Sequence record: MW349129.1 | Direction: 5' to 3' (one strand) | Length of the DNA stretch: 64,000 bases | In this document: in pieces, positions 19,160 to 61,784 of the stretch | How the letters are laid out: each line of letters opens with the position of its first letter | How positions within the stretch are numbered: position 1 is the first letter of the stretch | The notes under the pieces: generated by a model | Database searches by the model: none | What the model saw: only the letters and a program-made list of their open reading frames with translations | Told to the model about the DNA's origin: nothing | Position numbers and translations under genes: made by a program

Positions 19160-19182
19160 TTATTAGTTCCACCTCCTGCTAT

Positions 19183-30288: not shown

Positions 30289-30516
30289 ATGAATCCAGAT
30301 ATCAATTTTAATGATAATGGTAAATCTATGGATGAACTATATTCAAGGATACAACTTAGAGCAGCTAAACAAGTAGAAAAAGATATATTGAAAGATAATG
30401 AAGAATATTTTCTAGAAAAAGAAGTAAAAGAACTTAGAGAGCTTGTTTTTGAAGTAGCTAAAAAATATGACGTTAAAGAAATAAAAGATTATTTAGTTAG
30501 AAAAAATATGAAATAA
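30289..30516 (+). CDS. Small protein with C-terminal tag (IKDYLVRKNMK)
   Basis: GGGGGA SD. Confidence 0.8.
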   Translation: MNPDINFNDNGKSMDELYSRIQLRAAKQVEKDILKDNEEYFLEKEVKELRELVFEVAKKYDVKEIKDYLVRKNMK

Positions 30517-40890: not shown

Positions 40891-41550
40891 ATGGAGAAAT
40901 TTAGAAATGAATTAATAAACCATTATACTGATTTGCTAAGATTTAAAGATGATTCTTATTATTATTATAGATTAAAAATTAATTATTTGAATTTCGATTT
41001 TTCTAAAAATGTAAATTTAAGAAAAAGTAATGTGTTTAAATTAAATGATAAAATCAGCTTTTTCTTATATTTTAAAATTTTAATCCAAGATTTTATTTCA
41101 AATAGTTTAGATGAAAGTAGCGTGTCATTAATATTTTCAAGTGATTTTGATAATAATAATTTTATTTCTATATTATTCACTAAGTATGGTTCTGATATTG
41201 AATTGAAATTAGATTTAGGTGTATATTATGATTTACATGCAACTAAAATAGCTTTAATAGATTTAAATGAAGAGTTTCATACAGAATATTCGGACGATAG
41301 TGTTATAATTCATACAGATGAAGATAATTTTGAAAATGTAGTTTATTCTCTTCTAAACAAAATTAAATTCATTTTAGGAAATATATATTTATTTAATTTA
41401 TCTTTATTTAAAAATGGAGTGATAGAAGATAGTAATATATTTTATTTAGAAGAGATCGAAAATGTATTTAATGTCAGAAAGAATAGTATAATTGAAGAAC
41501 TTTCTGAAAGTGAAGTTAAAAAATATAAAATCAAAGAAGGGTTTAAATAA
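40891..41550 (+). CDS. Hypothetical protein, tag end EVKKYKIKEGFK
   Basis: AAGGG SD. Confidence 0.85.
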   Translation: MEKFRNELINHYTDLLRFKDDSYYYYRLKINYLNFDFSKNVNLRKSNVFKLNDKISFFLYFKILIQDFISNSLDESSVSLIFSSDFDNNNFISILFTKYGSDIELKLDLGVYYDLHATKIALIDLNEEFHTEYSDDSVIIHTDEDNFENVVYSLLNKIKFILGNIYLFNLSLFKNGVIEDSNIFYLEEIENVFNVRKNSIIEELSESEVKKYKIKEGFK

Positions 41551-41609
41551 AATATAATAGACTAAAAGTTATTTAGCTTACAAAAGATTAGAAATGGAGT
41601 GATATTTTA

Positions 41610-42254
41610 ATGGAAGAGAGTTATCTTGATAAAAGATTTGATAGTGAATATTTTAAAATAAAAACTAGAGATATGATAAACACTGCAAGATTTACTAAAG
41701 AACCAAACTTTGATTTAATTATAAATAACCGTAAAGAAGAAAAAATTTTATATACTAAAAATGACAGTATTAGAAATTTATTTATTGAATCTTTTATCTT
41801 ATATTTAAAAAATAATATTACAGACGTTTATACATTTAGTATATCAAGCAGTGATATTAAGTTAATTTTTAGTTTAAGATACAATCATACGAATAACGAT
41901 ACCAAATTTTTAATTTATATAATAGAAAATGATAAATTTAATTATGAAAAAGATGTATCTGAATTAGAAAAAATATTAAATGACATATCTTCTTTAGTAA
42001 ATAAAGAATACTATATATCTAAAGGTAGTTTTATAATAGACTATTTAGATATTGAAAAAATTGATAAAATATTGTATTACATTAATAAATTAGATGATCT
42101 TTATATACTATTAGATAATTCAGAAAAAGAAGGAAAATCGTATTTAAGTTACAATTCTTTTCTTAAAGAACTTTATTTAAAAAGAAACCTATATTCTAAA
42201 AGTATTACTAAAAAGGAATATACTGATAATTTAGTTAAAGAAAATTTCAAATAA
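41610..42254 (+). CDS. Hypothetical protein, tag end LVKENFK
   Basis: GGAG SD. Confidence 0.85.
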   Translation: MEESYLDKRFDSEYFKIKTRDMINTARFTKEPNFDLIINNRKEEKILYTKNDSIRNLFIESFILYLKNNITDVYTFSISSSDIKLIFSLRYNHTNNDTKFLIYIIENDKFNYEKDVSELEKILNDISSLVNKEYYISKGSFIIDYLDIEKIDKILYYINKLDDLYILLDNSEKEGKSYLSYNSFLKELYLKRNLYSKSITKKEYTDNLVKENFK

Positions 42255-44878: not shown

Positions 44879-45454
44879 ATGGAAAAATACTATAAATTTA
44901 ATTTATTTGAATGCATACTGAAAAGTATTGGTATGCATTCAGATGAATATGAAAATGTGATAAGAAATATAAATAAAAATTTTACATCTTTATATTTTTA
45001 TGACTATGAAGTTAATAATAGCAATATAGATGAGTTGATATATAACAATATACATGAACAATTAATTGACAACGGATATTTTTTATTTGAAGTTAATGAA
45101 GAAGAAAAAATATTAATTGATTTTGAAAATAATCTTTTATATGATAAATATAATGAGAAAATAGGAATGGTTTCTTTAAATAGAATTACTTCTTCTAGAG
45201 TAAATTTATTTTCAGATTTTGAGAATAAATATAGAGATCTAATATTTATGGAGAAAGAAGATATAAAATATGAAAATCTAATTGATATGGGTTTTAATAT
45301 TGTTCCTACTTTTGAAACTTCTATTGTATGTAAAAATAAAATAAATAATTTTGGTTTTTATAGTTTTGATATTAAAAATATTAAATATAAACTATTAATT
45401 GAATGTGATGAAAAAGAATTCAAGCTTAATAAGATTAAAGATAATTTTATATAA
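44879..45454 (+). CDS. Hypothetical protein, tag end IKDNFI
   Basis: GAGG SD. Confidence 0.8.
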   Translation: MEKYYKFNLFECILKSIGMHSDEYENVIRNINKNFTSLYFYDYEVNNSNIDELIYNNIHEQLIDNGYFLFEVNEEEKILIDFENNLLYDKYNEKIGMVSLNRITSSRVNLFSDFENKYRDLIFMEKEDIKYENLIDMGFNIVPTFETSIVCKNKINNFGFYSFDIKNIKYKLLIECDEKEFKLNKIKDNFI

Positions 45455-49077: not shown

Positions 49078-49103
49078 AAAAAATTTCTTTCCATTCCCCA
49101 TGA

Positions 49104-49115
49104 AACATTAATCTA
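49104..49115 (+). promoter_or_regulatory. Intron-internal putative late promoter for the endonuclease
   Basis: AACA-TTAATC-TA, 16 nt before the SD. Confidence 0.55.
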
Positions 49116-49143
49116 TTAATAAATAGATATTGGAGAGATAAAA

Positions 49144-50280
49144 ATGGTAATAAAAACAATTGATGAAATTAATAAAGAATTAAATGATAAAAATCTATTT
49201 CTGCTAGAAGAGTACAAAGGAAAAGTTGCGTATGAGCATAAGTTAAAGTGTGGAATCTGTAATACAATATTTGATAAGAAACTTAATTATGTATTTAGAA
49301 ATGAATTAGGGTGTAACGTATGTGCAAAAGAGAAAAGATCTAATACTAGAAGAGGTAAGAATTATCTAGAAAATATGATTGGTAAAGATGAAAATTACAA
49401 GTGGTTGGAAAAATTACCAAAATATATTAAAGATATAAAAAAAGTTAAACTTCGTATATTGCATGAAGATTGTGGTAATGAGTATCTAGTTTCTGTCACA
49501 CAGTTTCAAAAGGGTAAAGGTCGTTGTAAGTTTTGTTATAAAATGAATAATGAAATTATAAATGCACCTTTAAATGAAAATTACCAAAATATCATTAATG
49601 AAAGAAAAGAAGAAAGAACCAAACAGAGAAATGATATTAAAAAAGATAACAGAAGATATAGTAAAGTAAATACTAATATTCTTGAAGAGTCTATTCAAAA
49701 AAGAATGGATGGAAATGAATATGAATGGCTAGAAGAATACTCATATAACAATAAAGATAAACACTTCATAAAGCATAAAAAATGTAATTATGTATACGAA
49801 GTACGTCCTAATGATTTTCAACAAGGTTACAGTTGTCCAAATTGTTCTCGTAAATCTAGTAAAATAGAAAGAAATATTGTAAAGTATCTATCAGAAAATT
49901 CTATTTCATTTGAATTAGAAAGAAAATTAGATGTATATAAATACGATATCTATTTACCTGAAGAAGAGCTTTACATTGAAATTGATGGAGAACAGCATTT
50001 TGACAAAGATAGTACTTGGAATCAGAAAAGTAAAGTAGTAGAAAATGATAAAAAGAAAAATGAATTGATTATTAAAAACAATTTAAAACTATTAAGAATA
50101 GCTTTTCATAGTAAAAAAGATAAAATCAAAGATACAATGGAATTATTTGATTCTTTTATGAATAATGGAAAATTAAATAATAAAAGAATATCTTTATTAA
50201 AAGAAAGTGAAGATGATTTATCAGATTACTATGAATTCAATAACCAAAGATCTATTAGAAATCTATATTGCCGTCATTAA
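49144..50280 (+). CDS. Intron-encoded homing endonuclease (zinc-ribbon repeats plus Vsr/DUF559-like EDxHD-type nuclease domain)
   Basis: Three C/H-x2-C..CxxC units; YDIYLP..YIEIDGEQH..NDKKKN..LLRI. Confidence 0.82.
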   Translation: MVIKTIDEINKELNDKNLFLLEEYKGKVAYEHKLKCGICNTIFDKKLNYVFRNELGCNVCAKEKRSNTRRGKNYLENMIGKDENYKWLEKLPKYIKDIKKVKLRILHEDCGNEYLVSVTQFQKGKGRCKFCYKMNNEIINAPLNENYQNIINERKEERTKQRNDIKKDNRRYSKVNTNILEESIQKRMDGNEYEWLEEYSYNNKDKHFIKHKKCNYVYEVRPNDFQQGYSCPNCSRKSSKIERNIVKYLSENSISFELERKLDVYKYDIYLPEEELYIEIDGEQHFDKDSTWNQKSKVVENDKKKNELIIKNNLKLLRIAFHSKKDKIKDTMELFDSFMNNGKLNNKRISLLKESEDDLSDYYEFNNQRSIRNLYCRH

Positions 50281-50784: not shown

Positions 50785-50804
50785 AAATATATATTATAAT
50801 TATG
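50785..50804 (+). promoter_or_regulatory. Putative early promoter
   Basis: AAATATATATTAT-AATTAT-G plus hairpin AGTTGAT/ATCAACT. Confidence 0.7.
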
Positions 50805-50854: not shown

Positions 50855-51151
50855 ATGACAATCAAAATTATTAAAAATGAAATGCTACAGGAAGCTGTAG
50901 AAGGAAAAGAGAATAACGGTGGAGGTTACGAACATACTCGTACTGTTTTCGAATTCCAAGGAAAACAAGGAGTTTTCGAAGACACTTCTTGTGGTGATTT
51001 CGGTAGCAGATTCTTCATGGAATGGGATGGAAAAATGGCTATGTGGGGAAGTATGATTGATGAAGAATTCGAATACAGTGAATTCGATGAACAAGAACAA
51101 TCAGAACTTCTAAAGCATTTTAGTGTTCCTGTTTTTGAAGAAACAATCTAG
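50855..51151 (+). CDS. Small acidic early protein (monocistronic)
   Basis: About 22 D/E versus 8 K/R in 98 aa; own promoter and terminator. Confidence 0.85.
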   Translation: MTIKIIKNEMLQEAVEGKENNGGGYEHTRTVFEFQGKQGVFEDTSCGDFGSRFFMEWDGKMAMWGSMIDEEFEYSEFDEQEQSELLKHFSVPVFEETI

Positions 51152-51176
51152 GACATTAATGTCCTAGATTTCTTTT
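51145..51176 (+). terminator. Intrinsic terminator
   Basis: AATCTAGGACA-TTAA-TGTCCTAGATT then T-run. Confidence 0.8.
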
Positions 51177-51209
51177 ATTTTTTTTCTAAAAATATTCTAT
51201 TTTATGATT

Positions 51210-51229
51210 AAATATATATTATAAAAATA
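51210..51229 (+). promoter_or_regulatory. Putative early promoter
   Basis: AAATATATATTAT-AAAAAT-A. Confidence 0.65.
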
Positions 51230-51308
51230 GATGCAATTAAATATATTGAAAGATGTTGTTTTATATGTAAAGTTTTAGAAGAATTTAATAAGGGAGCTGA
51301 AATAGATA

Positions 51309-51791
51309 ATGATATATTACAAAAATAAAGTAAATAATGAAATATATGAAGTTAATAATATTCATAGAAAGGATGATGCTTTTTATTATGTGTTTGGTAA
51401 TGAATTTAAAAAAGAAAGAATGGAATTATATGAATCAGTGGGTAAAAAAATTGATTTATTTGATAAAGATAAAGGACATAAAGAATTAAACTTCCAATTA
51501 AATTATGACTCATCTAGATTATTTTTAGTTACACATATGAAATATGATAATAATAATCCTTTTGCACCTAAAGTAGTAGATTTAAAGAATCAAAATCTTG
51601 TCTCATCTGATTCTTCAGAAGATCTTTACTATATATTATATAAAAGAATGTGTAATGCAATAGATATACCTTTATTAAATTATAATATATTATTAAAAGA
51701 ATTTAATTTTGATAATGAAGACATATTTAAAATAATACCAGAAGATTGTAAAGAAGTAAAAGATTTTAAAATTAGAAATCTTTTTAAATAA
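51309..51791 (+). CDS. Tag-family protein (paralog of 52519-53010)
   Basis: MIYYKNKVNNEIYEV...IRNLFK. Confidence 0.85.
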   Translation: MIYYKNKVNNEIYEVNNIHRKDDAFYYVFGNEFKKERMELYESVGKKIDLFDKDKGHKELNFQLNYDSSRLFLVTHMKYDNNNPFAPKVVDLKNQNLVSSDSSEDLYYILYKRMCNAIDIPLLNYNILLKEFNFDNEDIFKIIPEDCKEVKDFKIRNLFK

Positions 51792-51806
51792 AAGGAGAAA
51801 TTTTAA

Positions 51807-52508
51807 ATGGAAAATATTAAATTGTATAAAAATCTAGAAAATGGTAATAAATTTACTTTATCTAAAGATGAAATTAATAATGGTAGATTTCTTTATAAAG
51901 TCATGAAACAAATAAAAAGTAATTTTTACCCATATTATAATTATGAAGACCAACCCATTACAACCAATGGAAACTCTTATTTAATTAATGAACAAATGAA
52001 TTTTCATTTTTATACACATTCAGATATTATTATAAATTTTAAAAATTTAATTGGAGTAGACGAAGATATAATAATTAAAATTAATGAAAATAAAGAAAGA
52101 AATAATTCAGCTTCAATTGTTTGTTTCTCTGATTCCAATACAGATAATGATGGAATTTATGAAAATATATTTCAAATTGTTTTAAATACAAAAAAGGCTA
52201 AGAAAATAAATCGTATGCTAAATAAATATGAAAGTGATAAATATAAAATATCTTCTCATACAATGGATAAAAATGAAGTAAATTTTAAAGTCAAATTTAA
52301 ACAAGATTATTTGTCTGATAAGAATAATGACGTTTATGATTCTCTAGATGAATTGATATATTATATATTAAAGGACCTTAGAATTAAGATCGACAATTCG
52401 TATATGTATTTTATGGATTATCTAAGATGGAATTTGGAATTTATTGCTGAAGAAATTACTGATGAGGAAGAAATTAAAAAATACTTAATTAAAGAAAAAT
52501 TTAAATAA
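51807..52508 (+). CDS. Tag-family protein
   Basis: Ends EEITDEEEIKKYLIKEKFK. Confidence 0.85.
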   Translation: MENIKLYKNLENGNKFTLSKDEINNGRFLYKVMKQIKSNFYPYYNYEDQPITTNGNSYLINEQMNFHFYTHSDIIINFKNLIGVDEDIIIKINENKERNNSASIVCFSDSNTDNDGIYENIFQIVLNTKKAKKINRMLNKYESDKYKISSHTMDKNEVNFKVKFKQDYLSDKNNDVYDSLDELIYYILKDLRIKIDNSYMYFMDYLRWNLEFIAEEITDEEEIKKYLIKEKFK

Positions 52509-52518
52509 GGAAGTGTAA

Positions 52519-53010
52519 ATGGATATGATATATTACAAAAATAAAGTAAATGGTGAAATATATGAAGTTAATAATATTCATAGAAAAGATGATGCATTTT
52601 ATTATGTATTCAATAATGAATTTAAAAAAGAGAATTCGTCTTTTTATAAATCTTATGGTAAAAAGATTGATTTATATGATGAAGACGTAGGAAGTATAAA
52701 ATTGGAGTTTTTCTTAATTTATGATTTTATTAATCTTCATTTAACTACACACTTTTCTTGGGATTTTAATAATATTCCTTTTATACCTAAAAATATAGAA
52801 TTAACAAATCAAAATCTTGTCATATCAGACTCTTCAATTGATCTTTATTATTTATTCTATAAAAGAATATGTGATGTGATAGATATAAATATGGCACATT
52901 ATAATATTCCATTAGGAAAATTTAATTTTGATAATGGAGATATATTTGAAATAATATCAGAAGATTGCAAAGAAGTAAAAGATCTTAAAGTTAGAAATCA
53001 TTTTAGATAA
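52519..53010 (+). CDS. Tag-family protein (paralog of 51309-51791)
   Basis: MIYYKNKVNGEIYEV...VRNHFR. Confidence 0.85.
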   Translation: MDMIYYKNKVNGEIYEVNNIHRKDDAFYYVFNNEFKKENSSFYKSYGKKIDLYDEDVGSIKLEFFLIYDFINLHLTTHFSWDFNNIPFIPKNIELTNQNLVISDSSIDLYYLFYKRICDVIDINMAHYNIPLGKFNFDNGDIFEIISEDCKEVKDLKVRNHFR

Positions 53011-53015
53011 GGAGA

Positions 53016-53201
53016 TTGATAAATATGAGAAAAGAAATTAGAAAAAATGAAAGTAAACAATTGACTTTACAAGAAAAATGGGAAATTGATGCAGAATTAT
53101 ACAGAGAGAAAAATAAAGACAAGAAAAAAATAAAAGGGCCAATTATAGGAAAGAAAGTTTCTAAAGAAGAAATGGAAAGAATCTTAAAAGGAGAAGAATA
53201 A
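53016..53201 (+). CDS. Small charged protein, no tag
   Basis: AAGGAG SD. Confidence 0.7.
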   Translation: MINMRKEIRKNESKQLTLQEKWEIDAELYREKNKDKKKIKGPIIGKKVSKEEMERILKGEE

Positions 53202-53202
53202 A

Positions 53203-53856
53203 ATGTTTAATCACAATATCTTACTATATAAACCTATTAGCATTGATTATAATGATTTTATTGAGTTAAACAAAGAAAAATATAAAAATGATAGAGAATA
53301 TATTAAAATGATAAATGTATTTAACTTAATGGAACTGTTAAAAATAGACTCTTTTAAAGATAAAACTTTCTTTGAAACTGAATGTAAATTAAAATTAAGA
53401 GGTTATGATGAATATAAAAATATAAAAGTGGTTTACAATCAATCATTAGACAGTGATCCAATATTCTCTAATTTAAAAAACTTTAATGCAGAATTAGATA
53501 TTATAAGTAAAGAAAGAGATAATACTTATATGACTGAAGAATTATTATATGAATACAATATGATGAAAATGAGCACATGTATAAATGATAAAGCTAACAC
53601 TATTACAATTAAAATAAAAAATTTCATTAATTCAAATAAAGAAAATTTTAATAACGATTTTGAATTCCTTATTAAAGAATTTGAAAATAATTTATTAAAG
53701 AATTTAACAGACCTCCATAAATATGAAGACTTACAACTTCTAATTAATAATGAATATCACAGTTTAAAAGATATTAGTGTATATAATGAAAAAATATTTA
53801 GACCTGCTACTGATAAAGAGTTTAAGAATTATTTAGTTAAAAAAGGATTTAGATGA
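53203..53856 (+). CDS. Tag-family protein
   Basis: Ends TDKEFKNYLVKKGFR. Confidence 0.85.
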   Translation: MFNHNILLYKPISIDYNDFIELNKEKYKNDREYIKMINVFNLMELLKIDSFKDKTFFETECKLKLRGYDEYKNIKVVYNQSLDSDPIFSNLKNFNAELDIISKERDNTYMTEELLYEYNMMKMSTCINDKANTITIKIKNFINSNKENFNNDFEFLIKEFENNLLKNLTDLHKYEDLQLLINNEYHSLKDISVYNEKIFRPATDKEFKNYLVKKGFR

Positions 53857-53867
53857 AAATATGTATT

Positions 53868-53887
53868 AAATATATATTATAAAAATG
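53868..53887 (+). promoter_or_regulatory. Putative early promoter
   Basis: AAATATATATTAT-AAAAAT-G; perfect 14-bp hairpin at 53887-53917. Confidence 0.75.
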
Positions 53888-53949
53888 AGATAATGAATTA
53901 ATATAATTCATTATCTCTATATTAATTTAATTAGGAGAGTGAAAAAGAT

Positions 53950-54558
53950 ATGGATTTAAAAGAGAATAAATTTTATTATAATAAAGATATTAATGAGCTT
54001 TTTATAATTGGTAAGGATGAAAGTGATATTAACGATAAGATAAATAAATTCTATTATAAAAAATTATTAGAAAAAAATTTAGATTATCATGGTTTAATTA
54101 ATAATCTTTATTATAATAGAAATATAAATTTTGATTTAATGGATGATGACGATATATATTTTAGTAATATGTATAATGGAATTAGAGAATATATTAAGGT
54201 GAGTTATGTAGAATTTTCATGTACAAATTTTGAAGATAATGAAGTAATATTACAGTTAGATACTTTTATTGATAAAAGCAATGATAAAAATCTTTTAGAA
54301 GTTCATAAAAATTCGCATGGTGTTACCATAACAATGGTAAAAGGTTTTTATGAAAAAGATCTTATAAATTATAATGAATACAAAAATATTTTAGACAAAT
54401 TATCTGGTCTGTTTGACACAATGCTTAAAGAAGAAAATGATGGAAATATTAAAATCTTTATAAATGATATTGATATATTTGAACCTTATGCATATTTTAG
54501 AGAGTTAGAAGACGAAAGAGGAATTAAAAATATTTTGGTTAAGAAAAATTTTATATAA
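53950..54558 (+). CDS. Tag-family protein
   Basis: Ends ELEDERGIKNILVKKNFI. Confidence 0.85.
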   Translation: MDLKENKFYYNKDINELFIIGKDESDINDKINKFYYKKLLEKNLDYHGLINNLYYNRNINFDLMDDDDIYFSNMYNGIREYIKVSYVEFSCTNFEDNEVILQLDTFIDKSNDKNLLEVHKNSHGVTITMVKGFYEKDLINYNEYKNILDKLSGLFDTMLKEENDGNIKIFINDIDIFEPYAYFRELEDERGIKNILVKKNFI

Positions 54559-54572
54559 AGGAGATAGATATA

Positions 54573-55193
54573 ATGGATGTAAATGAATATATAAATAATC
54601 ATGATTTTTATAGAGTTGGGAATGACGGTCAAGTATTTGTATTTAATAAAGATATATCAAAAGATGAATTAAATTCTAAAATATTTTCTAAATTATTTGC
54701 ATGCGAAAATATAGGAATTTTATTGTCTGAATATGGTTATTATGTAATAGATGAATATAATGTATTCTTAAGAAATAATGATAAAATATTATTAGTTGAA
54801 AATATGACTATTGATCTAAGTTTAATTAAAGATGATCTAATTGAATTAAATTTTACATTAATTATTAAATCTAGTCTTCCTTCAAAAATTGGCCCTTTTG
54901 AAAAAGATAATCATGATCCTTTTTATTATTATAATACTATTATTCAAATAGAAAATAAAGATAACTTTCAACATGAATTAATTTCTCATATAACAAATCA
55001 TTTTAATAAAATGAGCGATGTTGATTTAATGCTTTTAACTACTAAAAATGAAATTAAATTTAATAAAGATTATAGCGTTAATAAAAAATGTATTGATTTT
55101 AAATGTAATTTTAATGAAATTTATAAAATACTTAATAAATTAGAAGATGAAAAAGAAATTAAAAAATATCTAACTAAAGAAAATTTTAAATAA
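54573..55193 (+). CDS. Tag-family protein
   Basis: Ends LEDEKEIKKYLTKENFK. Confidence 0.85.
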   Translation: MDVNEYINNHDFYRVGNDGQVFVFNKDISKDELNSKIFSKLFACENIGILLSEYGYYVIDEYNVFLRNNDKILLVENMTIDLSLIKDDLIELNFTLIIKSSLPSKIGPFEKDNHDPFYYYNTIIQIENKDNFQHELISHITNHFNKMSDVDLMLLTTKNEIKFNKDYSVNKKCIDFKCNFNEIYKILNKLEDEKEIKKYLTKENFK

Positions 55194-55206
55194 GGATGAA
55201 ATAAAT

Positions 55207-55770
55207 ATGAATTTAGATAATATTGTAATATTAAAAAAGAAAAATGATGGTGAATTTGACAATAACAAATTTATAGAATTTAATCATAATAATATTAATA
55301 ATGATGAAATATTAAGTCTTTCTTTAATTACTCTATATACAAGCGTGTATGCATTTTATATAAAAAGTGATATGAAATATGACAATTTTGTTAGTTATTT
55401 AGCTAATTTTTATTTAGAAATAGATGGGTATTTAAAAGGACCTTTAAATATAACACATGATGAAAATAATAGAATGCTTATAATTTATAAAGGAAGACTA
55501 CCACAAGATATTTTCAAAGTTAGAGAATTTAACGTAAATACTAAATTATATGCGTATTTAATTAAAGGTGATAATTACGATACGGTAGAAGATGATCTAA
55601 TCAAATCAGTAATCAATGGATCAGAATATATAATAAACAGTGAAAGAATTAAACCAAAAATTATTATCAATGGATTATATAAGGATATTACAAATGTATT
55701 AAATTATTTTGAAAAACTTACCGATGAAAGAGAAATTAAAAATTACTTAGTTCAGAAAGGATTTATATAA
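55207..55770 (+). CDS. Tag-family protein
   Basis: Ends LTDEREIKNYLVQKGFI. Confidence 0.85.
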   Translation: MNLDNIVILKKKNDGEFDNNKFIEFNHNNINNDEILSLSLITLYTSVYAFYIKSDMKYDNFVSYLANFYLEIDGYLKGPLNITHDENNRMLIIYKGRLPQDIFKVREFNVNTKLYAYLIKGDNYDTVEDDLIKSVINGSEYIINSERIKPKIIINGLYKDITNVLNYFEKLTDEREIKNYLVQKGFI

Positions 55771-55787
55771 AATAAGGAGGATTAAAA

Positions 55788-56411
55788 TTGGATAAGACAT
55801 TATATGTATCAGATATATTAGATGAAAAAATTATAGGAAGAAAGGATCTTAATAAAGATGAACTTTTTGATTTGTCATTTAATACAATTTTAAATAATTC
55901 TGATGACAATAGATTTAATAAAGAAGGATTTAGTTTAATGTTAACGTTTTCAAAAGGATTAATTTTAAAATTTGATTATACAGACAAATATTTTTATGTG
56001 AAAGATTTTATATTTTTAATAGAAAAAGTTGATGGCAACTATGAATTTAATTTTACATTAAGTATTCCAGAATTTACAGACAGTAAAATTGAAATTGGAT
56101 TAGGAATTTTTGAATCTGAAAAAGGTCATAGAGAATTTTATTTTAATGATTTTTCTTGTTATAAAGAAGGAAAAACTTTATTAGAAAGAGCTAAAGAATA
56201 TTTAACGGATGATATTTTTAATAATTATGGATTAAGTATCAATATTTTTACATTGAAAAATAAAAATAGAATTTTGTCAGATTATGATTTTGTCATAAAT
56301 AATAATGATATAGATGAGATTTACAGTTTAAAAAATATAGACAAATTATTTAAAGAAGTAACAAATGAGAAAGAAATTAAAAACTATTTAACTAAAGAAA
56401 ATTTTAAGTAG
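55788..56411 (+). CDS. Tag-family protein
   Basis: Ends EVTNEKEIKNYLTKENFK; TTG start behind AAGGAGG. Confidence 0.85.
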   Translation: MDKTLYVSDILDEKIIGRKDLNKDELFDLSFNTILNNSDDNRFNKEGFSLMLTFSKGLILKFDYTDKYFYVKDFIFLIEKVDGNYEFNFTLSIPEFTDSKIEIGLGIFESEKGHREFYFNDFSCYKEGKTLLERAKEYLTDDIFNNYGLSINIFTLKNKNRILSDYDFVINNNDIDEIYSLKNIDKLFKEVTNEKEIKNYLTKENFK

Positions 56412-56456
56412 AGTGAAGTAAAAATAATTATTTAATTCAGAAAGGGTTTAGTTAAT

Positions 56457-57059
56457 ATGGAAATGAATTTAGATTCTTATGAATATTATTATAATGATGA
56501 TGAAAAAGTTTTAGCTAAAACACCAGTTGATATATCAAAAGAAACTACTAATAAAAAGATTTCAATTGAATACTATAAAAATATATTTAAAAAAGATTTT
56601 TATCTGTTTCGTAAACAAATTATTGGAACTCATGTAATATTCGACAGTGATTCTTTGCATAAAATAATTAATAAGAGTGATGGAACATCTGTACCAGGAT
56701 TTAATTTATTATTAGATTTTGAAGTTCTTAGTGTTTCAAGAGAAATTATCTTGAAACTAAGTTTTTCAATTAATGATTCTAAATTCTTTAAAACATTTGA
56801 TAAAAGTAAAGATATTTTAGAATTTTCAAAAATGAGTTCTATATATTACGATCATGTAGAGGATAACCTTGAAGATAAAATGGCATATTTATTAGCTAAA
56901 CTATTCTTTGATATGCATGTGAATGAGAATGAAGATATCGAAATTTATTTAGAGGATAAATTTAATGAAATGTTAGATATATCTAAACCGTATAAATACT
57001 TTAGATTGTTAAATGAAAAAGAAGTTAAAAAACACTTAACAAGAGAAGGATTTAAATAA
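56457..57059 (+). CDS. Tag-family protein
   Basis: Ends LNEKEVKKHLTREGFK. Confidence 0.85.
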   Translation: MEMNLDSYEYYYNDDEKVLAKTPVDISKETTNKKISIEYYKNIFKKDFYLFRKQIIGTHVIFDSDSLHKIINKSDGTSVPGFNLLLDFEVLSVSREIILKLSFSINDSKFFKTFDKSKDILEFSKMSSIYYDHVEDNLEDKMAYLLAKLFFDMHVNENEDIEIYLEDKFNEMLDISKPYKYFRLLNEKEVKKHLTREGFK

Positions 57060-57130
57060 ACATTTTTAATGAATTTAATTAACTTTCTTTTATATTAATA
57101 AATATAATGAAAGAGAGTTGAATAAGATAA

Positions 57131-57910
57131 ATGTCTGAAACTAATGAAATTGATTTAATATCACAAATCAATGATATGATGGATGAGTATAAAATGTTAG
57201 TTAAATTTAAAGATAAAATGGAAAATAAAGAAATTCAATTAGAAAATCGTATACAGGATTTAACTAAGAATCTGAAATATCCTAAACATACATTCGTATC
57301 TAATATGGAAGCTAATATTATCAGTGTAGAAAAAGAAATTAAAGATACTATTATGCAAATGAAAAATGTTAAAAAAGATATTATTGACTTAACTATGAAA
57401 GCTCAGAAAATGGCTGAAGATGATGAATCTGAAGATAATTACAAAACTCTTGCTAAAAATGTACTTAATGAGCTTAATAATATGTCTAATAAAGATATTC
57501 TAAACAGTATGATGGAACCTGAAGAAGTAAATGATGAAGATACTGATTTTAGTGAAGAATTGGATGCGAAATTATCACAATTAGATGAAGAAGAGAAATC
57601 TATTAATAAAGAAGTAGATCAAAAAGAAGAATTAAGCGAAGAAATTAATGAACTAGACCAACAAGATTTATCTTCTATATTAAAAGTCTATAAAGGCACA
57701 TTACAATTCTTTGTTATAGGAGATTCTCCTGAAGAATATGAATTAGTAGTTGCTGATATGGATATGAATATTATTGAAGAAGATGAAATGAAAGATGAAT
57801 ACCCAGAGTTATTTACTATGACTAGAGATCTATTATTTGAAGATGTTGAAGGTAATGATGAAATAGTTACAGATGATTTTGGAAATATTTATCAAAAAGC
57901 AGAATTTTAA
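57131..57910 (+). CDS. Acidic coiled-coil protein
   Basis: 259 aa, heptad N-terminal half, D/E-rich C-terminal half. Confidence 0.85.
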   Translation: MSETNEIDLISQINDMMDEYKMLVKFKDKMENKEIQLENRIQDLTKNLKYPKHTFVSNMEANIISVEKEIKDTIMQMKNVKKDIIDLTMKAQKMAEDDESEDNYKTLAKNVLNELNNMSNKDILNSMMEPEEVNDEDTDFSEELDAKLSQLDEEEKSINKEVDQKEELSEEINELDQQDLSSILKVYKGTLQFFVIGDSPEEYELVVADMDMNIIEEDEMKDEYPELFTMTRDLLFEDVEGNDEIVTDDFGNIYQKAEF

Positions 57911-57920
57911 ATTATTTTAC

Positions 57921-57951
57921 CCCATAATATATTAATACAATATATTATGGG
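57921..57951 (+). terminator. Stem-loop/terminator
   Basis: CCCATAATATATT / AATATATTATGGG. Confidence 0.7.
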
Positions 57952-57980
57952 TATTTATTATATAGGAGAGTGAAATAGAT

Positions 57981-58106
57981 ATGTTAAAAAGATTATACAA
58001 TTTATTAACTAAGAAAAAATTTGAAAAGAGATTATACGACTTTAGATTTAATTATCAAGATCATGAACATCTAAATCAAGTTCATAGAGATTCAAATAAT
58101 ATATAA
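57981..58106 (+). CDS. 41-aa microprotein missing from the ORF track
   Basis: AGGAG SD; MLKRLYNLLTKKKFEKRLYDFRFNYQDHEHLNQVHRDSNNI*. Confidence 0.6.
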   Translation: MLKRLYNLLTKKKFEKRLYDFRFNYQDHEHLNQVHRDSNNI

Positions 58107-58125
58107 TATGAAAGGATGATTATTA

Positions 58126-58527
58126 ATGTTATCAGAATATAGATTAAATTCAAGTAAAGAAAATATTAAACAGCTATTAAGAGATTATGGTTTTAAAAAG
58201 GACTCTTATACTAAAGCTTTATTATATAGAAAACGTGTAACTGATCCAAATGATATTTTATTCATAGTAGCTGAAGTAGTTATTGAAACTAATTCAGATC
58301 TAGTTAAATTAAATTACTATGATAGTAAACATAATAGATTTAATCCTTCTAATGAATCACCAGAAGTTCAAAAGGGATTAAGTATATTAGAAGATATGAA
58401 AGAAAAAGAATTATTAATTGAACCAGAATTAACTCGAAATGAAGAAGAAAAAGAAGTTCTTGATAAACTTAAAAAACAACGTGAAGAAATGGAAAATGGT
58501 CAAGTATCACCCAATTCTGAAAATTAG
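58126..58527 (+). CDS. Hypothetical protein
   Basis: GAAAGGA SD. Confidence 0.8.
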   Translation: MLSEYRLNSSKENIKQLLRDYGFKKDSYTKALLYRKRVTDPNDILFIVAEVVIETNSDLVKLNYYDSKHNRFNPSNESPEVQKGLSILEDMKEKELLIEPELTRNEEEKEVLDKLKKQREEMENGQVSPNSEN

Positions 58528-58530
58528 AAT

Positions 58531-58550
58531 AAATATATATTATAAAAATG
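58531..58550 (+). promoter_or_regulatory. Putative early promoter
   Basis: AAATATATATTAT-AAAAAT-G plus hairpin ATCCCAATACTA/TAGTATTGGGAT. Confidence 0.75.
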
Positions 58551-58595
58551 TTATCCCAATACTATTAAATTAGTATTGGGATTATTATACTAAAA

Positions 58596-59414
58596 TTGGA
58601 GATGAAATGGATAATGACAAAATATTTTATAGATAAAGAGAAAGATGAATTAATTGAAATTGATAGGAATTATCTTAACCGATATGAATATATTGCATAT
58701 GTATTAACTACTATGGATATTAATAATCTTTTAAGTAGTAAAGGATATGCTAAATCTTTCATAGATAATATTTCTAAAGAAGAAGATTATATGAATTTTC
58801 ATTATAAAGAAATTGATAATGATATTTATTTTATAGACAAACATAATAAAAATGATGCTCTTAAAAGATTTAATACTAATTTTCATATTAATTTTAATAC
58901 TAGTAGAATGGATAAAATTGAAAGTGGAGAATTTAAATTAGATTTTTATTTTGAAAATTCATTATATAAAAAATATTTCAATGTAATTACTAATGGTTTA
59001 GTAAATAAAAATAATTTAGTTAATGAAGGAATAAATGAAAAAACGAGAGCTTTTATACATGTTAAATCATTTGAAAAAGGTTTATATGATATCAAATATA
59101 GTAATGAATTATTTACGGACGTAAATTTTCCAATACCTGCATTTGAGAAAAATCCTATTATTAAATTTATAGAAGATTTTAAGGATTTATTCTTTATCAT
59201 ATTATATCAGAATAATCTTAGTGTATTAATGTCTCTTTATGAGATTAAATATATGTATAAAGATGATATAGAATTTTATATTAGTTTCTCCAGTAAGGGT
59301 GGCGGTTTAATTAATTTATTAGATCTAATAGAAAGTGATGAAAATGATTTATTTAAAGAAATTAAAACCGAAAAAGAAATGAAAGCTTTTAAAGTTAGAA
59401 AAGGATTCAAATAA
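58596..59414 (+). CDS. Tag-family protein
   Basis: Ends FKEIKTEKEMKAFKVRKGFK; the start may be a few codons downstream. Confidence 0.8.
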   Translation: MEMKWIMTKYFIDKEKDELIEIDRNYLNRYEYIAYVLTTMDINNLLSSKGYAKSFIDNISKEEDYMNFHYKEIDNDIYFIDKHNKNDALKRFNTNFHINFNTSRMDKIESGEFKLDFYFENSLYKKYFNVITNGLVNKNNLVNEGINEKTRAFIHVKSFEKGLYDIKYSNELFTDVNFPIPAFEKNPIIKFIEDFKDLFFIILYQNNLSVLMSLYEIKYMYKDDIEFYISFSSKGGGLINLLDLIESDENDLFKEIKTEKEMKAFKVRKGFK

Positions 59415-59435
59415 TATAAAGAAAGGATTTTCATA

Positions 59436-60176
59436 ATGGAATACAATAATTATTATAGATATAAATTAGATGGAAAAATACTTCACTTTGATATGGATAG
59501 AACTGATTTACGTAGAGATAAATTGGCTGAAATATTTACTAAAGTTAAGATGGAATATATTTATAAAGATGAAAAAATGATTAAAGAACCAAGAAACTTT
59601 ATTTACCGATCTAATCTTTCTTTAGAGTATTCTCATTTTAAAGATAAGGTATGTGAAATCAGACAAATTTCTAAAATAATGGGTAAAAACTATTTAAAAG
59701 ATTTATTAATTTACGATACAGATATTAGTTTAAGTTTTAATTCTATTTTAGATGGAGCTATATTTAAAAAAGATTTTCCAGAAGGATCTTTTCATGACAA
59801 AATAGAAAGTAATATGAATAGAAAATATTTAATTTTAAGTGATAATATAAGTCATACTAGTGAAAATTTTGTTGATTTAAATGATAAAGATTATATTTTA
59901 AATTTTGAAGAAGTAGAATTGCTGATCAAAGAATTTAATAGAACTCTTTTAAATTATCTTATGGATTTAATGAGCTATGGAGATTTAAAATTAAATGTTA
60001 GGAAATCAGATTTAGCATATTTTATGACAGGAATATATACAAAAATGGAAGAACACGAAGATAAATTATTCCCTATATTTGATTATAAATTTTTACTTAA
60101 TGAATCTGGATTATTTGAAGAGATTACAGATGAGAAAGTTATTAAAGAATATTTAGTGAAAAATAATTTTAAATAA
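59436..60176 (+). CDS. Tag-family protein
   Basis: Ends FEEITDEKVIKEYLVKNNFK. Confidence 0.85.
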   Translation: MEYNNYYRYKLDGKILHFDMDRTDLRRDKLAEIFTKVKMEYIYKDEKMIKEPRNFIYRSNLSLEYSHFKDKVCEIRQISKIMGKNYLKDLLIYDTDISLSFNSILDGAIFKKDFPEGSFHDKIESNMNRKYLILSDNISHTSENFVDLNDKDYILNFEEVELLIKEFNRTLLNYLMDLMSYGDLKLNVRKSDLAYFMTGIYTKMEEHEDKLFPIFDYKFLLNESGLFEEITDEKVIKEYLVKNNFK

Positions 60177-60192
60177 AAGGAGAAATAATATA

Positions 60193-60972
60193 ATGAGTAT
60201 AAATAAAAGTTATACAAAATATTTTTTAAGCAAAATGACAGACGAATTATTTTCAGTCACTAATTTATCCAGATATGGTATAAATGAAGATCATTTATAT
60301 CTACCTTATTTACTTCCTAACTTACAAATAAAAAGTGAAGAAATAACTATATCGTCTGAAGAGATTGTTGATAAAGGTGGCAATGGAAAGAATTTATATT
60401 CAGGAACTATATCAATTGGATATATTTTCCCAATTATCAAATATAGTGTTAATAATAAAAATTCAATGAATATGCTTATTATTGATTTTGATATTATTTT
60501 CAACGAAGAAATAGAAAATGAAAACTATTTAAAAGTTAAAATTGAAAGCCCATATGATTCAGATATAAATTCAATATTTTTTAATAACGTTATTGGTAAT
60601 ATATTAGACGAATCCAATTCTTTAAAAATACCTTTTAGATTGCATATAAATAGTATGGAAGACTTAATATCAGATTTTAATAATAGTAAAGAAAATAATT
60701 TTAAAAATAATAAAGATTTATATCAAATATTAGTTAAAGTGAATAGTTCTATATTGGAAATTTTATCACAAATTAGAGATCATTTTAATATAGAATTCTT
60801 TGTTTCAGATTCCTGTTTCTCACATATACCAATAATTGATAAGAGAAATAATAAGGATATGGATGATAAATATTATAATTTATTTGATGAGTATAGAATA
60901 TCTGGTGTATTTGAAGAAATTACGGATGAAAGAGTCATTAAAAAATACTTAGTGAAAAATAATTTTAAATAA
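60193..60972 (+). CDS. Tag-family protein
   Basis: Ends FEEITDERVIKKYLVKNNFK. Confidence 0.85.
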   Translation: MSINKSYTKYFLSKMTDELFSVTNLSRYGINEDHLYLPYLLPNLQIKSEEITISSEEIVDKGGNGKNLYSGTISIGYIFPIIKYSVNNKNSMNMLIIDFDIIFNEEIENENYLKVKIESPYDSDINSIFFNNVIGNILDESNSLKIPFRLHINSMEDLISDFNNSKENNFKNNKDLYQILVKVNSSILEILSQIRDHFNIEFFVSDSCFSHIPIIDKRNNKDMDDKYYNLFDEYRISGVFEEITDERVIKKYLVKNNFK

Positions 60973-60986
60973 AGGAGATCAATATA

Positions 60987-61784
60987 ATGAGTGCAATTAA
61001 AAGTGATAAAAAGTATTTCTTATGTAAAATAAATGATGAATTATTTGAAGTTGATAATAAAAATAATAGATGGCCATTTTTATATGATTATTTACCTTTA
61101 ATAATAGCTGAAAAAATAATTAATTCAGATGAAAAAGACTCATATGAAACTAGTGCATTAGATGTGCATTATAAAAAAGAAGATAATGTGATTACAGGAA
61201 ATTTAAGATTTTTATCAAGATGTTTACCTCCTGTCCTTTACAATGTTAATGATAAAAATTCATTTGAAACAATTATAACTCTTGCAGATTTTAAGTTTAA
61301 AAGAGATATCACTAAATCTCCATTTAGCATAGATAAGAATAGTGCTATTGACAAAATACTATTTACAATGGAACCTATACAAAATGAAATTGATGCAGCT
61401 TTATTTAATAGTATTATAAAAGATATTTTAAACGAAGAAGATGAAATAGAATTAGAAAGATTTATATTAGTTGATAATATTGAAAAATTATTAAATGAAA
61501 TTCAAGAACAGAATATAAAACATCATGATGAATTTAGAGGTTTAATTTCAGATATATTCAATAATTATCTTAATATATTAAAATCATTAAGACATCATTT
61601 TAATATTGAATTTTTCTTTGCTAAAACTTCTTTTTTAGATATGCTAAATATCTATGATTATGATGCCATTATTAATGATAGCTATAAAATAAATATTTTT
61701 GAAGGCGATTTAGATGTTATATTTGAAGAGATTACGGATGAGAAAGTTATTAAAAAATACTTAGTGAAAAATAATTTTAAATAA
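60987..61784 (+). CDS. Tag-family protein
   Basis: Ends FEEITDEKVIKKYLVKNNFK. Confidence 0.85.
   Translation: MSAIKSDKKYFLCKINDELFEVDNKNNRWPFLYDYLPLIIAEKIINSDEKDSYETSALDVHYKKEDNVITGNLRFLSRCLPPVLYNVNDKNSFETIITLADFKFKRDITKSPFSIDKNSAIDKILFTMEPIQNEIDAALFNSIIKDILNEEDEIELERFILVDNIEKLLNEIQEQNIKHHDEFRGLISDIFNNYLNILKSLRHHFNIEFFFAKTSFLDMLNIYDYDAIINDSYKINIFEGDLDVIFEEITDEKVIKKYLVKNNFK

What the first reader, a model, noticed from the sequence alone, without database searches (positions are those of the whole stretch)
51309..61784. Conserved N-terminal hairpin and C-terminal helix clamping hypervariable cores
Seen: many tagged proteins also begin alike, with an aromatic-basic strand, a turn and E-[LI]-[FY]-x-[VI]: IYYKNKVNGEIYEV, KFYYNKDINELFII, TKYFIDKEKDELIEI, TKYFLSKMTDELFSV, KKYFLCKINDELFEV, KLYKNLENGNKFTL, YEYYYNDDEKVLAK. 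The 120-230 aa between the ends show little similarity. Inference: the N-terminal strands and the C-terminal F-x-E-[IL] strand plus helix may fold into one small discontinuous domain that displays a swappable insert, giving a modular effector library.
Basis: partly seen in the sequence, partly recalled or inferred. Interest (0 to 1): 0.7.

Follow-up and report, generated by a model that had tools for sequence, protein, structure and literature searches.

The report
Expanded early-gene family, Staphylococcus jumbo phage
The interval holds 13 tandem copies of a previously undescribed, fast-diverging protein family found only in Staphylococcus jumbo phages; it lies behind early-type promoters and shares an N-terminal hairpin and a near-invariant C-terminal strand-helix, so it is probably a set of host-takeover or anti-defence binders rather than a scaffold with unrelated swappable inserts.

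Summary
The window is about 99% identical to Staphylococcus jumbo phage Madawaska, an AR9/PBS1-like uracil-DNA phage. 13 ORFs, not 14, carry the C-terminal tag ([FI]-x-E-[IV]-T-D-E-K-E-I-K-x-Y-L-V-K-x-N-F-K-stop). Most begin with an aromatic beta-hairpin more often than chance allows. The middles diverge strongly between nine subfamilies in the window.

These are not unrelated inserts. Seven of the 13 have clear full-length paralogues in the interval. Core-only profiles give weak, mostly co-linear links between subfamilies. The one confident AlphaFold model (family A, pLDDT 83, pTM 0.85) is a single compact alpha/beta domain that runs from the hairpin to the C-terminal strand-helix. It has no structural relative and no conserved catalytic residues.

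The array forms three units, each behind an exact AR9 early (virion RNA polymerase) promoter. In phage DC4, 33 ORFs against 262 annotated features (about 12%) carry the tag. The family is absent from the Listeria and Bacillus relatives checked, from one strict tag-pattern scan of 185,000 cellular genomes, and from Pfam, PHROGs and NCBIfam.

Best reading: a lineage-specific early-gene family of non-enzymatic binders. Contact between the termini could not be tested because the tool returns no coordinates. Function is inferred.

The parts
51145..51170 (+). Terminator-like hairpin that closes the upstream unit
   Evidence: Madawaska annotates a terminator overlapping this site (record 113143-113185 = window 51143-51185)
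51210..51222 (+). Early (virion RNA polymerase) promoter 1: exact AR9 consensus 13-mer
   Evidence: consensus AAATATATATTAT-N6-G from PMC5312081
51309..51791 (+). Family member, subfamily D (160 aa)
51807..52508 (+). Family member, subfamily E (233 aa)
52519..53010 (+). Family member, subfamily D (163 aa), 67% identical to the 51309 protein
53025..53201 (+). Small basic ORF (58 aa), not a family member
   Evidence: (CPT_Madawaska_120)
53203..53856 (+). Family member, subfamily F (217 aa)
53868..53917 (+). Early promoter 2 (53868-53880), followed by a stem-loop that starts at the predicted +1 (53887-53917)
53950..54558 (+). Family member, subfamily G (202 aa)
54573..55193 (+). Family member, subfamily C (206 aa)
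   Evidence: AlphaFold model failed
55207..55770 (+). Family member, subfamily H (187 aa)
55788..56411 (+). Family member, subfamily C (207 aa, TTG start)
56457..57059 (+). Family member, subfamily I (200 aa)
57131..57910 (+). Acidic 259-aa protein (coiled-coil appearance is by eye); untagged; kept in the array of all seven phages compared
57921..57951 (+). Terminator-like hairpin
58126..58527 (+). 133-aa conserved non-member; its N-terminus resembles the tag followed by a second helix
58531..58582 (+). Early promoter 3 (58531-58543), followed by a stem-loop near the predicted +1 (58553-58582)
58602..59414 (+). Family member, subfamily B (270 aa; Madawaska annotates the start at 58614)
59436..60176 (+). 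Family member, subfamily A (246 aa)
60193..60972 (+). Family member, subfamily A (259 aa); modelled with pLDDT 83, pTM 0.85
60987..61784 (+). Family member, subfamily A (265 aa)
30289..30516 (+). Outside the interval: 75-aa protein that carries the tag but no N-terminal hairpin
40891..42254 (+). Outside the interval: two more tagged proteins (40891-41550 and 41610-42254), downstream of the exact early-promoter 13-mer at 38875
44879..45454 (+). Outside the interval: tagged 191-aa protein that starts MEKYYKF

Best explanation
The interval is the largest of several arrays of one lineage-specific protein family of Staphylococcus jumbo phages (the S6, PALS2, Madawaska group).

Shown or well supported:
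- The 13 genes form three units. Each lies behind an exact match to the AR9 early promoter, which in AR9 is read by the injected virion RNA polymerase.
- Each protein has an N-terminal aromatic beta-hairpin, a rapidly diverging sheet-rich middle and a near-invariant C-terminal strand plus helix that ends in F-K at the free carboxyl end.
- In the one subfamily with a confident model, all of this forms a single compact alpha/beta domain.
- No histidine, cysteine or serine is conserved in families A or C, which argues for binding proteins rather than enzymes.

Inferred:
- The genes are made early in infection.
- The conserved termini build the scaffold of the fold and perhaps a shared docking surface. 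The variable middle gives each paralogue its own target.
- The array therefore works as a diversified set of host-takeover or anti-defence binders, gained and lost between related phages.
For: Identity. The interval is 99% identical to Madawaska, and all its genes are annotated hypothetical.

One family.
- Tag HMM: 13 ORFs at 29-42 bits against a background of 3.4 bits or less.
- Full-length profile comparisons: 75-96% probability for most of the better-linked subfamily pairs (chiefly among A, C, E, G, H, J); D, K and several pairs involving B, E, F and I are much weaker. Controls score under 1.5%.
- Family HMM hits: A to B full length (5e-10), I to G full length (8e-8), and hits extending 60-90 aa beyond the tag for G/H, E/H and C/A.
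- Core-only links above background: B to A 1e-4, C to J 7e-5, F to A 2e-5, E to K 7e-3. The best background hit is 0.038.
- Best tag-less local alignments are co-linear in 13 of 21 family pairs against 7 of 24 controls.

Structure. The family A model has pLDDT 83 and pTM 0.85, with the hairpin and the C-terminal strand-helix as predicted. Independent BFVD models of relatives match it at TM 0.68-0.83.

Selection acts on the protein. Synonymous codon sharing in the tag equals expectation. dN/dS is 0.31 for the N-terminus, 0.49 for the core and 0.25 for the C-terminus, with equal dS.

Early class. The exact AR9 early consensus lies at 51210, 53868 and 58531. The 15-base pattern gives six sites against 0.75 expected.

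Expansion and turnover.
- 33 tagged ORFs in DC4, all on one strand, in several clusters.
- The array holds 7 to 15 members depending on the phage.
- The family is absent from the syntenic locus in AR9 and in Listeria phage LPJP1.

No enzyme signature. The invariant columns of families A and C contain no His, Cys or Ser.
Against: - No expression data exist for this phage. No RNA run holds the region, and the SA1 transcriptome paper gives no per-gene classes for the array.
- With the tag removed, profile-profile similarity between supergroups is not individually significant (3% or less). A single fold for all subfamilies is therefore not proven.
- Only one subfamily was modelled with confidence. 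The family C model failed.
- No binding partner, phenotype or structural analogue gives direct evidence of function.
Confidence: 0.6

Rival explanations
1. The N-terminal hairpin and the C-terminal strand-helix fold together into a small discontinuous clamp domain. The clamp displays unrelated, exchangeable insert domains, giving a modular effector library.
For: - The termini are conserved while the cores of different supergroups show no significant similarity.
- The terminal motifs co-occur genome-wide.
- Subfamily J has an E-like N-terminus (z 3.4-6.2) but a body closer to C, which hints at mosaicism.
- The helix carries two hydrophobic stripes, as expected for a helix packed on two sides. 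This is read from the sequence, not tested.
Against: - The single confident model is one compact domain (pTM 0.85).
- Similarity between subfamilies is graded and co-linear.
- There is no DNA-level sign of cassette exchange at the conserved ends.
- The tag occurs without the hairpin, on the 75-aa protein at 30289 and the protein at 40891.
- Lengths form a continuum from 142 to 288 aa.
Confidence: 0.15
2. The C-terminal 16-20 residues are an autonomous, portable signal appended to otherwise unrelated early proteins. It could be a docking peptide for a common hub such as a polymerase, a protease adaptor site or a localisation factor, or it could be a timed degradation tag. The N-terminal similarity would then be secondary.
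For: - The tag always sits exactly at the free C-terminus, ending F-[KRIS]. One lysine is invariant and the phenylalanine nearly invariant across 15 paralogues.
- It is the most conserved part under protein-level selection.
- It is present on proteins that lack the hairpin, and on a 75-aa protein that aligns only to the C-terminal third of family members.
Against: - AlphaFold places the segment as a confidently packed strand and helix (pLDDT about 90 for residues 241-250), not as a free tail.
- Most tagged proteins also share the N-terminal motif and C-terminal similarity that extends 60-90 aa beyond the tag.
- No cellular protein matched one strict tag pattern (E-I-K-x-Y-L-x-K-x-x-F-K-stop) in 185,579 species genomes, so no host motif is obviously mimicked.
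Confidence: 0.2
3. These are virion-packaged internal proteins, analogous to the T4 internal-protein locus. The conserved terminal peptide would be a capsid-targeting signal.
For: A tandem, variable array with a conserved terminal peptide resembles the T4-type internal-protein locus (from my own knowledge of that system). The neighbouring gene is annotated 'virion associated protein' in Madawaska.
Against: - The early promoters argue against late, structural expression.
- None of UFVDC4_00025-42 is among the 15 proteins detected in DC4 virions, although that proteome is shallow.
- The conserved signal is C-terminal, with no sign of a cleavable N-terminal leader.
Confidence: 0.04
4. The terminal conservation is a DNA-level effect rather than a protein feature. 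Candidates are recombination linkers between cassettes, or translational-coupling signals for the next gene.
For: The genes are packed 10-20 bp apart, so each tag-coding end lies just upstream of the next gene's ribosome-binding site and hairpin-coding start.
Against: - Among identical residues in the tag, the same codon is used in 75% of pairs against 73% expected from codon usage.
- dS is the same in the termini and the core: 0.31, 0.38 and 0.34.
Confidence: 0.01

Closest known systems
AR9/PBS1 early genes transcribed by the injected virion RNA polymerase
   Same: The promoter consensus AAATATATATTAT-N6-G matches exactly upstream of each of the three units. The phage clade and local synteny are the same, with the virion RNA polymerase beta-prime gene upstream and the SbcC-like ATPase downstream.
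   Different: AR9 has five unrelated small genes at this locus and no tagged family. Early timing has not been measured for the Staphylococcus phages.
T4-type internal-protein locus with a capsid-targeting sequence
   Same: A tandem, hyperplastic locus whose members share a short terminal peptide but differ elsewhere. Members in T4 are thought to counter host defences (from my own knowledge).
   Different: The T4 signal is N-terminal and cleaved, and the proteins are late and packaged. Here the signal is C-terminal, the genes lie behind early promoters and none was found in virions.
Poxvirus ankyrin proteins with a C-terminal PRANC (F-box-like) motif, and other viral multigene families such as ASFV MGF360/505 or the roughly 35-copy zinc-ribbon expansion in Bacillus phage G
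   Same: A large lineage-specific paralogue family in a big virus. It has a variable target-binding body and a conserved extreme C-terminal element that could dock to a common hub. The phage G expansion is noted in PMC7824862.
   Different: No sequence or fold relationship exists. The host is bacterial and no hub has been identified. This is a 'works like' analogy only.
Adaptor proteins with a C-terminal protease-docking tail, such as the SspB tail that binds ClpX
   Same: A short basic/hydrophobic peptide at the exact C-terminus attached to a separate substrate-binding body (from my own knowledge).
   Different: No homology was tested or found. Here the segment is predicted to be packed, not flexible.

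Membership tests
AR9-type early (virion RNA polymerase) transcription unit | Promoter consensus AAATATATATTAT-N6-G directly upstream | tested here: met
   Exact 13-mers lie at 51210, 53868 and 58531 on the coding strand. G is at the expected +1 for two of them and A then G for the first. The consensus is from PMC5312081.
AR9-type early (virion RNA polymerase) transcription unit | Transcripts accumulate early and independently of protein synthesis | not testable with these tools
   No RNA run holds the region. The SA1 RNA-seq paper lists no classes for these ORFs.
AR9-type early (virion RNA polymerase) transcription unit | The phage belongs to the AR9/PBS1-like clade with split multisubunit RNA polymerases | tested here: met
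   The upstream gene is annotated as the RNA polymerase beta-prime N-terminal subunit, aligned to an AR9 protein. The SbcC-like neighbour is 35% identical to the AR9 and PBS1 proteins in the same synteny.
One homologous protein family across all subfamilies A-K | Significant similarity outside the shared C-terminal tag | tested here: inconclusive
   Core-only HMM links join A-B-F, C-J (with weaker links to D, G and I) and E-K at E from 2e-5 to 7e-3, against 0.038 for the best background hit. Tag-less hhalign between supergroups gives 3% or less. H stays unlinked apart from its C-terminal 60-90 aa.
One homologous protein family across all subfamilies A-K | The same fold in models of different subfamilies | tested here: inconclusive
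   The family A model is confident. The family C model failed at pLDDT 36; its order of secondary-structure elements is similar but unreliable.
   Structure prediction returns confidence and secondary structure only, without coordinates or contacts.
T4-type capsid-targeted internal proteins | Present in purified virions | tested here: not met
   None of UFVDC4_00025-42 is among the 15 proteins in the DC4 virion proteome (PMC10638138 Table 3). The proteome is shallow, so this is a weak negative.
T4-type capsid-targeted internal proteins | N-terminal cleavable targeting leader and late expression | tested here: not met
   The strongly conserved signal is C-terminal, and the units have early-type promoters.
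SAP/HeH helix-extended-helix motif (a lead from the look of the tag) | Match to the Pfam SAP, HeH or Rho_N models | tested here: not met
   No such hit at E up to 10 for five tag segments, for the N-terminus of the 58126 protein, or for the 75-aa 30289 protein. The tag profile against PDB sequences gives only one hit, at E 2.2.
Ulp1/C48 or YopJ cysteine proteases (a lead from the language-model atlas) | Conserved catalytic His and Cys | tested here: not met
   Atlas scores are 0.76 or lower, which is in the noise range. The invariant and near-invariant columns of family A contain no His or Cys.
Any curated family (Pfam, PHROGs, NCBIfam) | A hit at or near the curated threshold | tested here: not met
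   The best hits are far below the cut-offs.

The most novel reading that the evidence does not exclude
The near-invariant C-terminal strand-helix ending in F-K-COOH is a docking module. Through it, about 30 different early proteins, each with its own target-binding body, are brought to a single phage or host hub. This would be a bacterial-virus counterpart of the poxvirus PRANC/F-box adaptor families, built on a fold with no known relatives.
Probability: 0.2. Interest if true: 0.8.

Novelty: new variant of a known kind. Interest (0 to 1): 0.55.

Why it matters
Staphylococcus jumbo phages are being considered as therapeutic agents, yet most of their genes are unannotated. This family alone covers 33 ORFs against 262 annotated features in DC4 (about 12%), and appears to be the most expanded gene family in these genomes, though no systematic census of other families was made. 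It lies behind early promoters and differs in copy number between otherwise near-identical phages, which is the pattern expected of genes in the arms race with the host.

Defining the family gives a concrete list of candidates for host-takeover and anti-defence functions. These uracil-DNA phages have, for example, no identified uracil-DNA glycosylase inhibitor (PMC10303552). The family also offers a probable new fold and a sharply defined C-terminal motif whose partner could be found by a simple pull-down.

Tried and rejected
Family and fold searches that found nothing:
- Pfam, PHROGs and NCBIfam scans of members, tag segments and neighbours gave nothing near threshold.
- The language-model atlas scored 0.76 or lower for three members and held no models. 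The protease lead from it was rejected because no His or Cys is conserved.
- The family A profile matched E. coli ribonucleotide reductase R2 in the PDB sequence set at E 0.005. I rejected this match: it is a single marginal sequence family, the R2 fold is all-helical while the matched model region contains strands, and no conserved metal ligands are present.

Searches for the family elsewhere:
- tblastn of the tag against 50,697 phage records found only the 10 Staphylococcus jumbo phages.
- A profile search of 1.84 billion representative proteins found only 8 clusters.
- An IMG/VR pattern scan gave one chance hit.
- A pattern scan of cellular genomes gave 10 chance hits, none in a real ORF.

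Other dead ends:
- The second AlphaFold job (family C) failed at pLDDT 36.
- No RNA runs hold the region.
- The gene-conversion or recombination-linker explanation was rejected on synonymous-site data.
- The DNA-mimic idea gained no support: pI is 4.7-6.0, which is unremarkable.
- An N-terminal HMM trained on this array did not recognise the N-termini of tagged proteins elsewhere in DC4 (1 of 18). Simple aromatic-pair counting did.

Full report
**What the window is.** The interval 51309-61784 matches Staphylococcus phage Madawaska (MW349129.1) at 99% identity over its full length. It matches nine other Staphylococcus jumbo phages less completely. Every gene in it is annotated 'hypothetical protein'. 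These phages belong to the AR9/PBS1-like uracil-DNA clade with split multisubunit RNA polymerases. The gene upstream of the array is the beta-prime N-terminal subunit, interrupted by an intron that carries a homing endonuclease. The gene downstream is an SbcC/Rad50-like ATPase, 35% identical to its AR9 and PBS1 counterparts.

**The C-terminal tag.** I built a profile of the last 20 residues from the arrays of seven phages. It scores 13 ORFs in the interval at 29-42 bits, while unrelated ORFs in the window reach at most 3.4 bits. The count is therefore 13, not 14. ORFs 57131-57910 (acidic) and 58126-58527 are conserved non-members. A profile retrained on a whole genome finds four more tagged ORFs elsewhere in the window, at 30289, 40891, 41610 and 44879. 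Reversed-sequence controls give nothing below E 0.17.

**The N-terminal motif.** The motif is real.
- Leaving out one subfamily at a time, a profile of the first 32 residues ranks members of A, B, D, E, G and I above all 80 background proteins. F passes by its median only. C is borderline: one background protein scores at or above its median member. H, J and K do not pass.
- In the complete genome of phage DC4, an aromatic pair within the first 14 residues occurs in 18 of 33 tagged ORFs and 17 of 214 untagged ones (p=1.6e-9). For tagged ORFs outside this array the figure is 8 of 18 (p=1.3e-4).

**How different the middles are.** Clustering the arrays of seven phages gives eleven subfamilies, nine of them in the window. 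The window order is D E D F G C H C I, then the two non-members, then B A A A.

Within subfamilies the similarity is plain. The two D copies are 67% identical. The three A copies are 30-32% identical over most or all of their length. The two C copies are 32% identical over 122 residues.

Between subfamilies the picture is mixed.
- Full-length profile comparison gives 75-96% probability for most of the better-linked pairs (chiefly among A, C, E, G, H and J). D, K and several pairs involving B, E, F and I are much weaker. Controls stay under 1.5%.
- That signal is mostly the tag. With 30 residues removed from each end, every pair falls under 17%, the same as controls. Tag-less supergroup profiles stay at 3% or less.
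- The middles are still not unrelated. Family HMMs align A to B and I to G over their full lengths. G/H, E/H and C/A align over 60-90 residues beyond the tag.
- Core-only HMMs give B to A at 1e-4, C to J at 7e-5, F to A at 2e-5 and E to K at 7e-3. The best background hit is 0.038.
- The best tag-less local alignments are co-linear in 13 of 21 family pairs against 7 of 24 control pairs.

This graded pattern fits one rapidly diverging family better than unrelated inserts, but it does not prove a single fold for all subfamilies.

**Structure.** An alignment of 21 family A and B sequences gave a confident AlphaFold model of the 60193 protein, with pLDDT 83 and pTM 0.85.
- It is followed by a helix, a five-strand meander (51-118) and three helices with short strands between them.
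- The chain ends with strand 240-243 (F-E-E-I) and helix 246-258, which is the tag.
- The high pTM indicates one compact body.
- Independent BFVD models of relatives superpose at TM 0.68-0.83.

The second job, for family C, failed at pLDDT 36. Its secondary-structure elements come in the same order, but that is not reliable. The tool returns no coordinates, so I could not test whether the hairpin touches the C-terminal helix.

**Protein-level or DNA-level conservation.** Among identical residues in the tag, paralogues use the same codon in 75% of pairs against 73% expected from codon usage. Across 117 ortholog or paralogue pairs, dS is similar in the N-terminus, core and C-terminus (0.31, 0.38, 0.34). 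dN/dS is 0.31, 0.49 and 0.25. The termini are therefore kept by selection on the protein. They are not maintained by gene conversion, recombination linkers or overlapping signals. The middles are relaxed but not shown to be under positive selection.

**Expression class.** The AR9 early promoter, read by the injected virion RNA polymerase, has the consensus AAATATATATTAT-N6-G (PMC5312081). Exact copies lie at 51210, 53868 and 58531, each just upstream of a block of family genes. Further copies lie at 50785, 45514, 38875 and 33097, and one is on the other strand. The 15-base version occurs six times against 0.75 expected. With the hairpins at 51145, 53887, 57921 and 58553, this divides the array into three early-type units. 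Early timing itself is inferred, because no RNA data cover this phage. The SA1 transcriptome paper gives no per-gene classes for the array.

**Size and range of the family.** In the complete DC4 genome an iterated tag profile converges on 33 ORFs, against 262 annotated features. All are on one strand and fall in several clusters. These include a second array of 142-152-aa minimal members at 171866-174677 and a third at 195778-199743.
- The array in this locus holds 7 to 15 members depending on the phage.
- The tag is found only in the ten Staphylococcus jumbo phages among 50,697 phage records.
- A family A profile finds only eight clusters among 1.84 billion representative proteins.
- The syntenic loci of Listeria phage LPJP1 and Bacillus phage AR9 lack the family.
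- Pattern scans of IMG/VR and of 185,579 species genomes gave only chance matches.
- No curated family matches.
- None of the papers I read on these phages mentions the family.

**Interpretation.** Four things are shown: a clade-specific, much expanded, rapidly diverging family; early-type promoters; protein-level constraint on both termini; and one compact domain in the only good model. The rest is inferred. The invariant columns of families A and C contain no His, Cys or Ser, so the proteins are probably binders rather than enzymes. Early position, tandem expansion and turnover between near-identical phages fit host-takeover or anti-defence roles.

The tag may be more than scaffold. It always sits exactly at the free C-terminus, with one invariant lysine and a nearly invariant phenylalanine. 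It also occurs on a 75-aa protein without the hairpin. A shared docking function is therefore the most interesting reading that remains open.

Packaging into virions is unlikely. The promoters are early-type, and none of the array proteins is among the 15 detected in DC4 virions, although that proteome is shallow.

**Verdict.** The structural guess about a hairpin and a strand-helix is borne out by the one good model. The 'clamp displaying swappable unrelated inserts' is not supported, and contact between the termini is untested.

Noticed in passing
window 53887-53917, 58553-58582, and downstream of 33097, 38875 and 45514; also DC4: Most early-promoter 13-mers are followed by a stable stem-loop that begins at or near the predicted transcription start. 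This holds for 6 of 8 sites in the window and 16 of 22 in DC4, judged against the 5th percentile of random 44-mers. Some hairpins that the scan called terminators may therefore be 5'-terminal stem-loops of early transcripts, or may serve both roles.
   Followed up: partly
window 47725-50280: The RNA polymerase beta-prime N-terminal gene ends inside the catalytic D-F-D-G motif region. It is followed by a 378-aa homing endonuclease gene (49144-50280). Madawaska annotates this as an intron-split gene. AR9 marks its homologue as a virion RNA polymerase subunit.
   Followed up: partly
window 58126-58527: This conserved 133-aa non-member begins with S-K-E-N-I-K-Q-L-L-R-D-Y-G-F-K-K. That resembles the C-terminal tag placed at an N-terminus and followed by a second helix, like a helix-extended-helix motif. 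Pfam gives no support; there is only a weak PHROG hit (phrog_33962, E 2.5e-4, unknown function).
   Followed up: partly
window 30289-30516: A 75-aa protein carries the tag without any N-terminal hairpin. It aligns only to the C-terminal roughly 55 residues of family profiles, as if it were a stand-alone C-terminal module.
   Followed up: partly
DC4 (MZ779063.1) 171866-174677 and 195778-199743: Two further arrays of tagged proteins lie elsewhere in the genome. One holds 142-152-aa minimal members that begin M-K-Y-Y-K-L-N. The corresponding regions lie outside this window.
   Followed up: partly
window 57131-57910: An acidic 259-aa protein (coiled-coil appearance by eye) sits in the middle of the array in all seven Staphylococcus phages compared. 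A protein of similar size and acidic C-terminus occupies the same position in Listeria phage LPJP1.
   Followed up: no
window 13268-25161, minus strand: Two adjacent giant ORFs of 1963 and 1992 aa lie in a stretch of raised G+C (up to 0.37 against about 0.22-0.28 elsewhere). Proline-, leucine- and alanine-rich frames appear on the opposite strand, which suggests repetitive structural proteins.
   Followed up: no
window 51100-59000: Near-identical sequence is held by DNA runs from indoor, clothing, soil, bird, chicken-gut and food-fermentation metagenomes. Relatives of this phage are therefore widespread in the environment.
   Followed up: no
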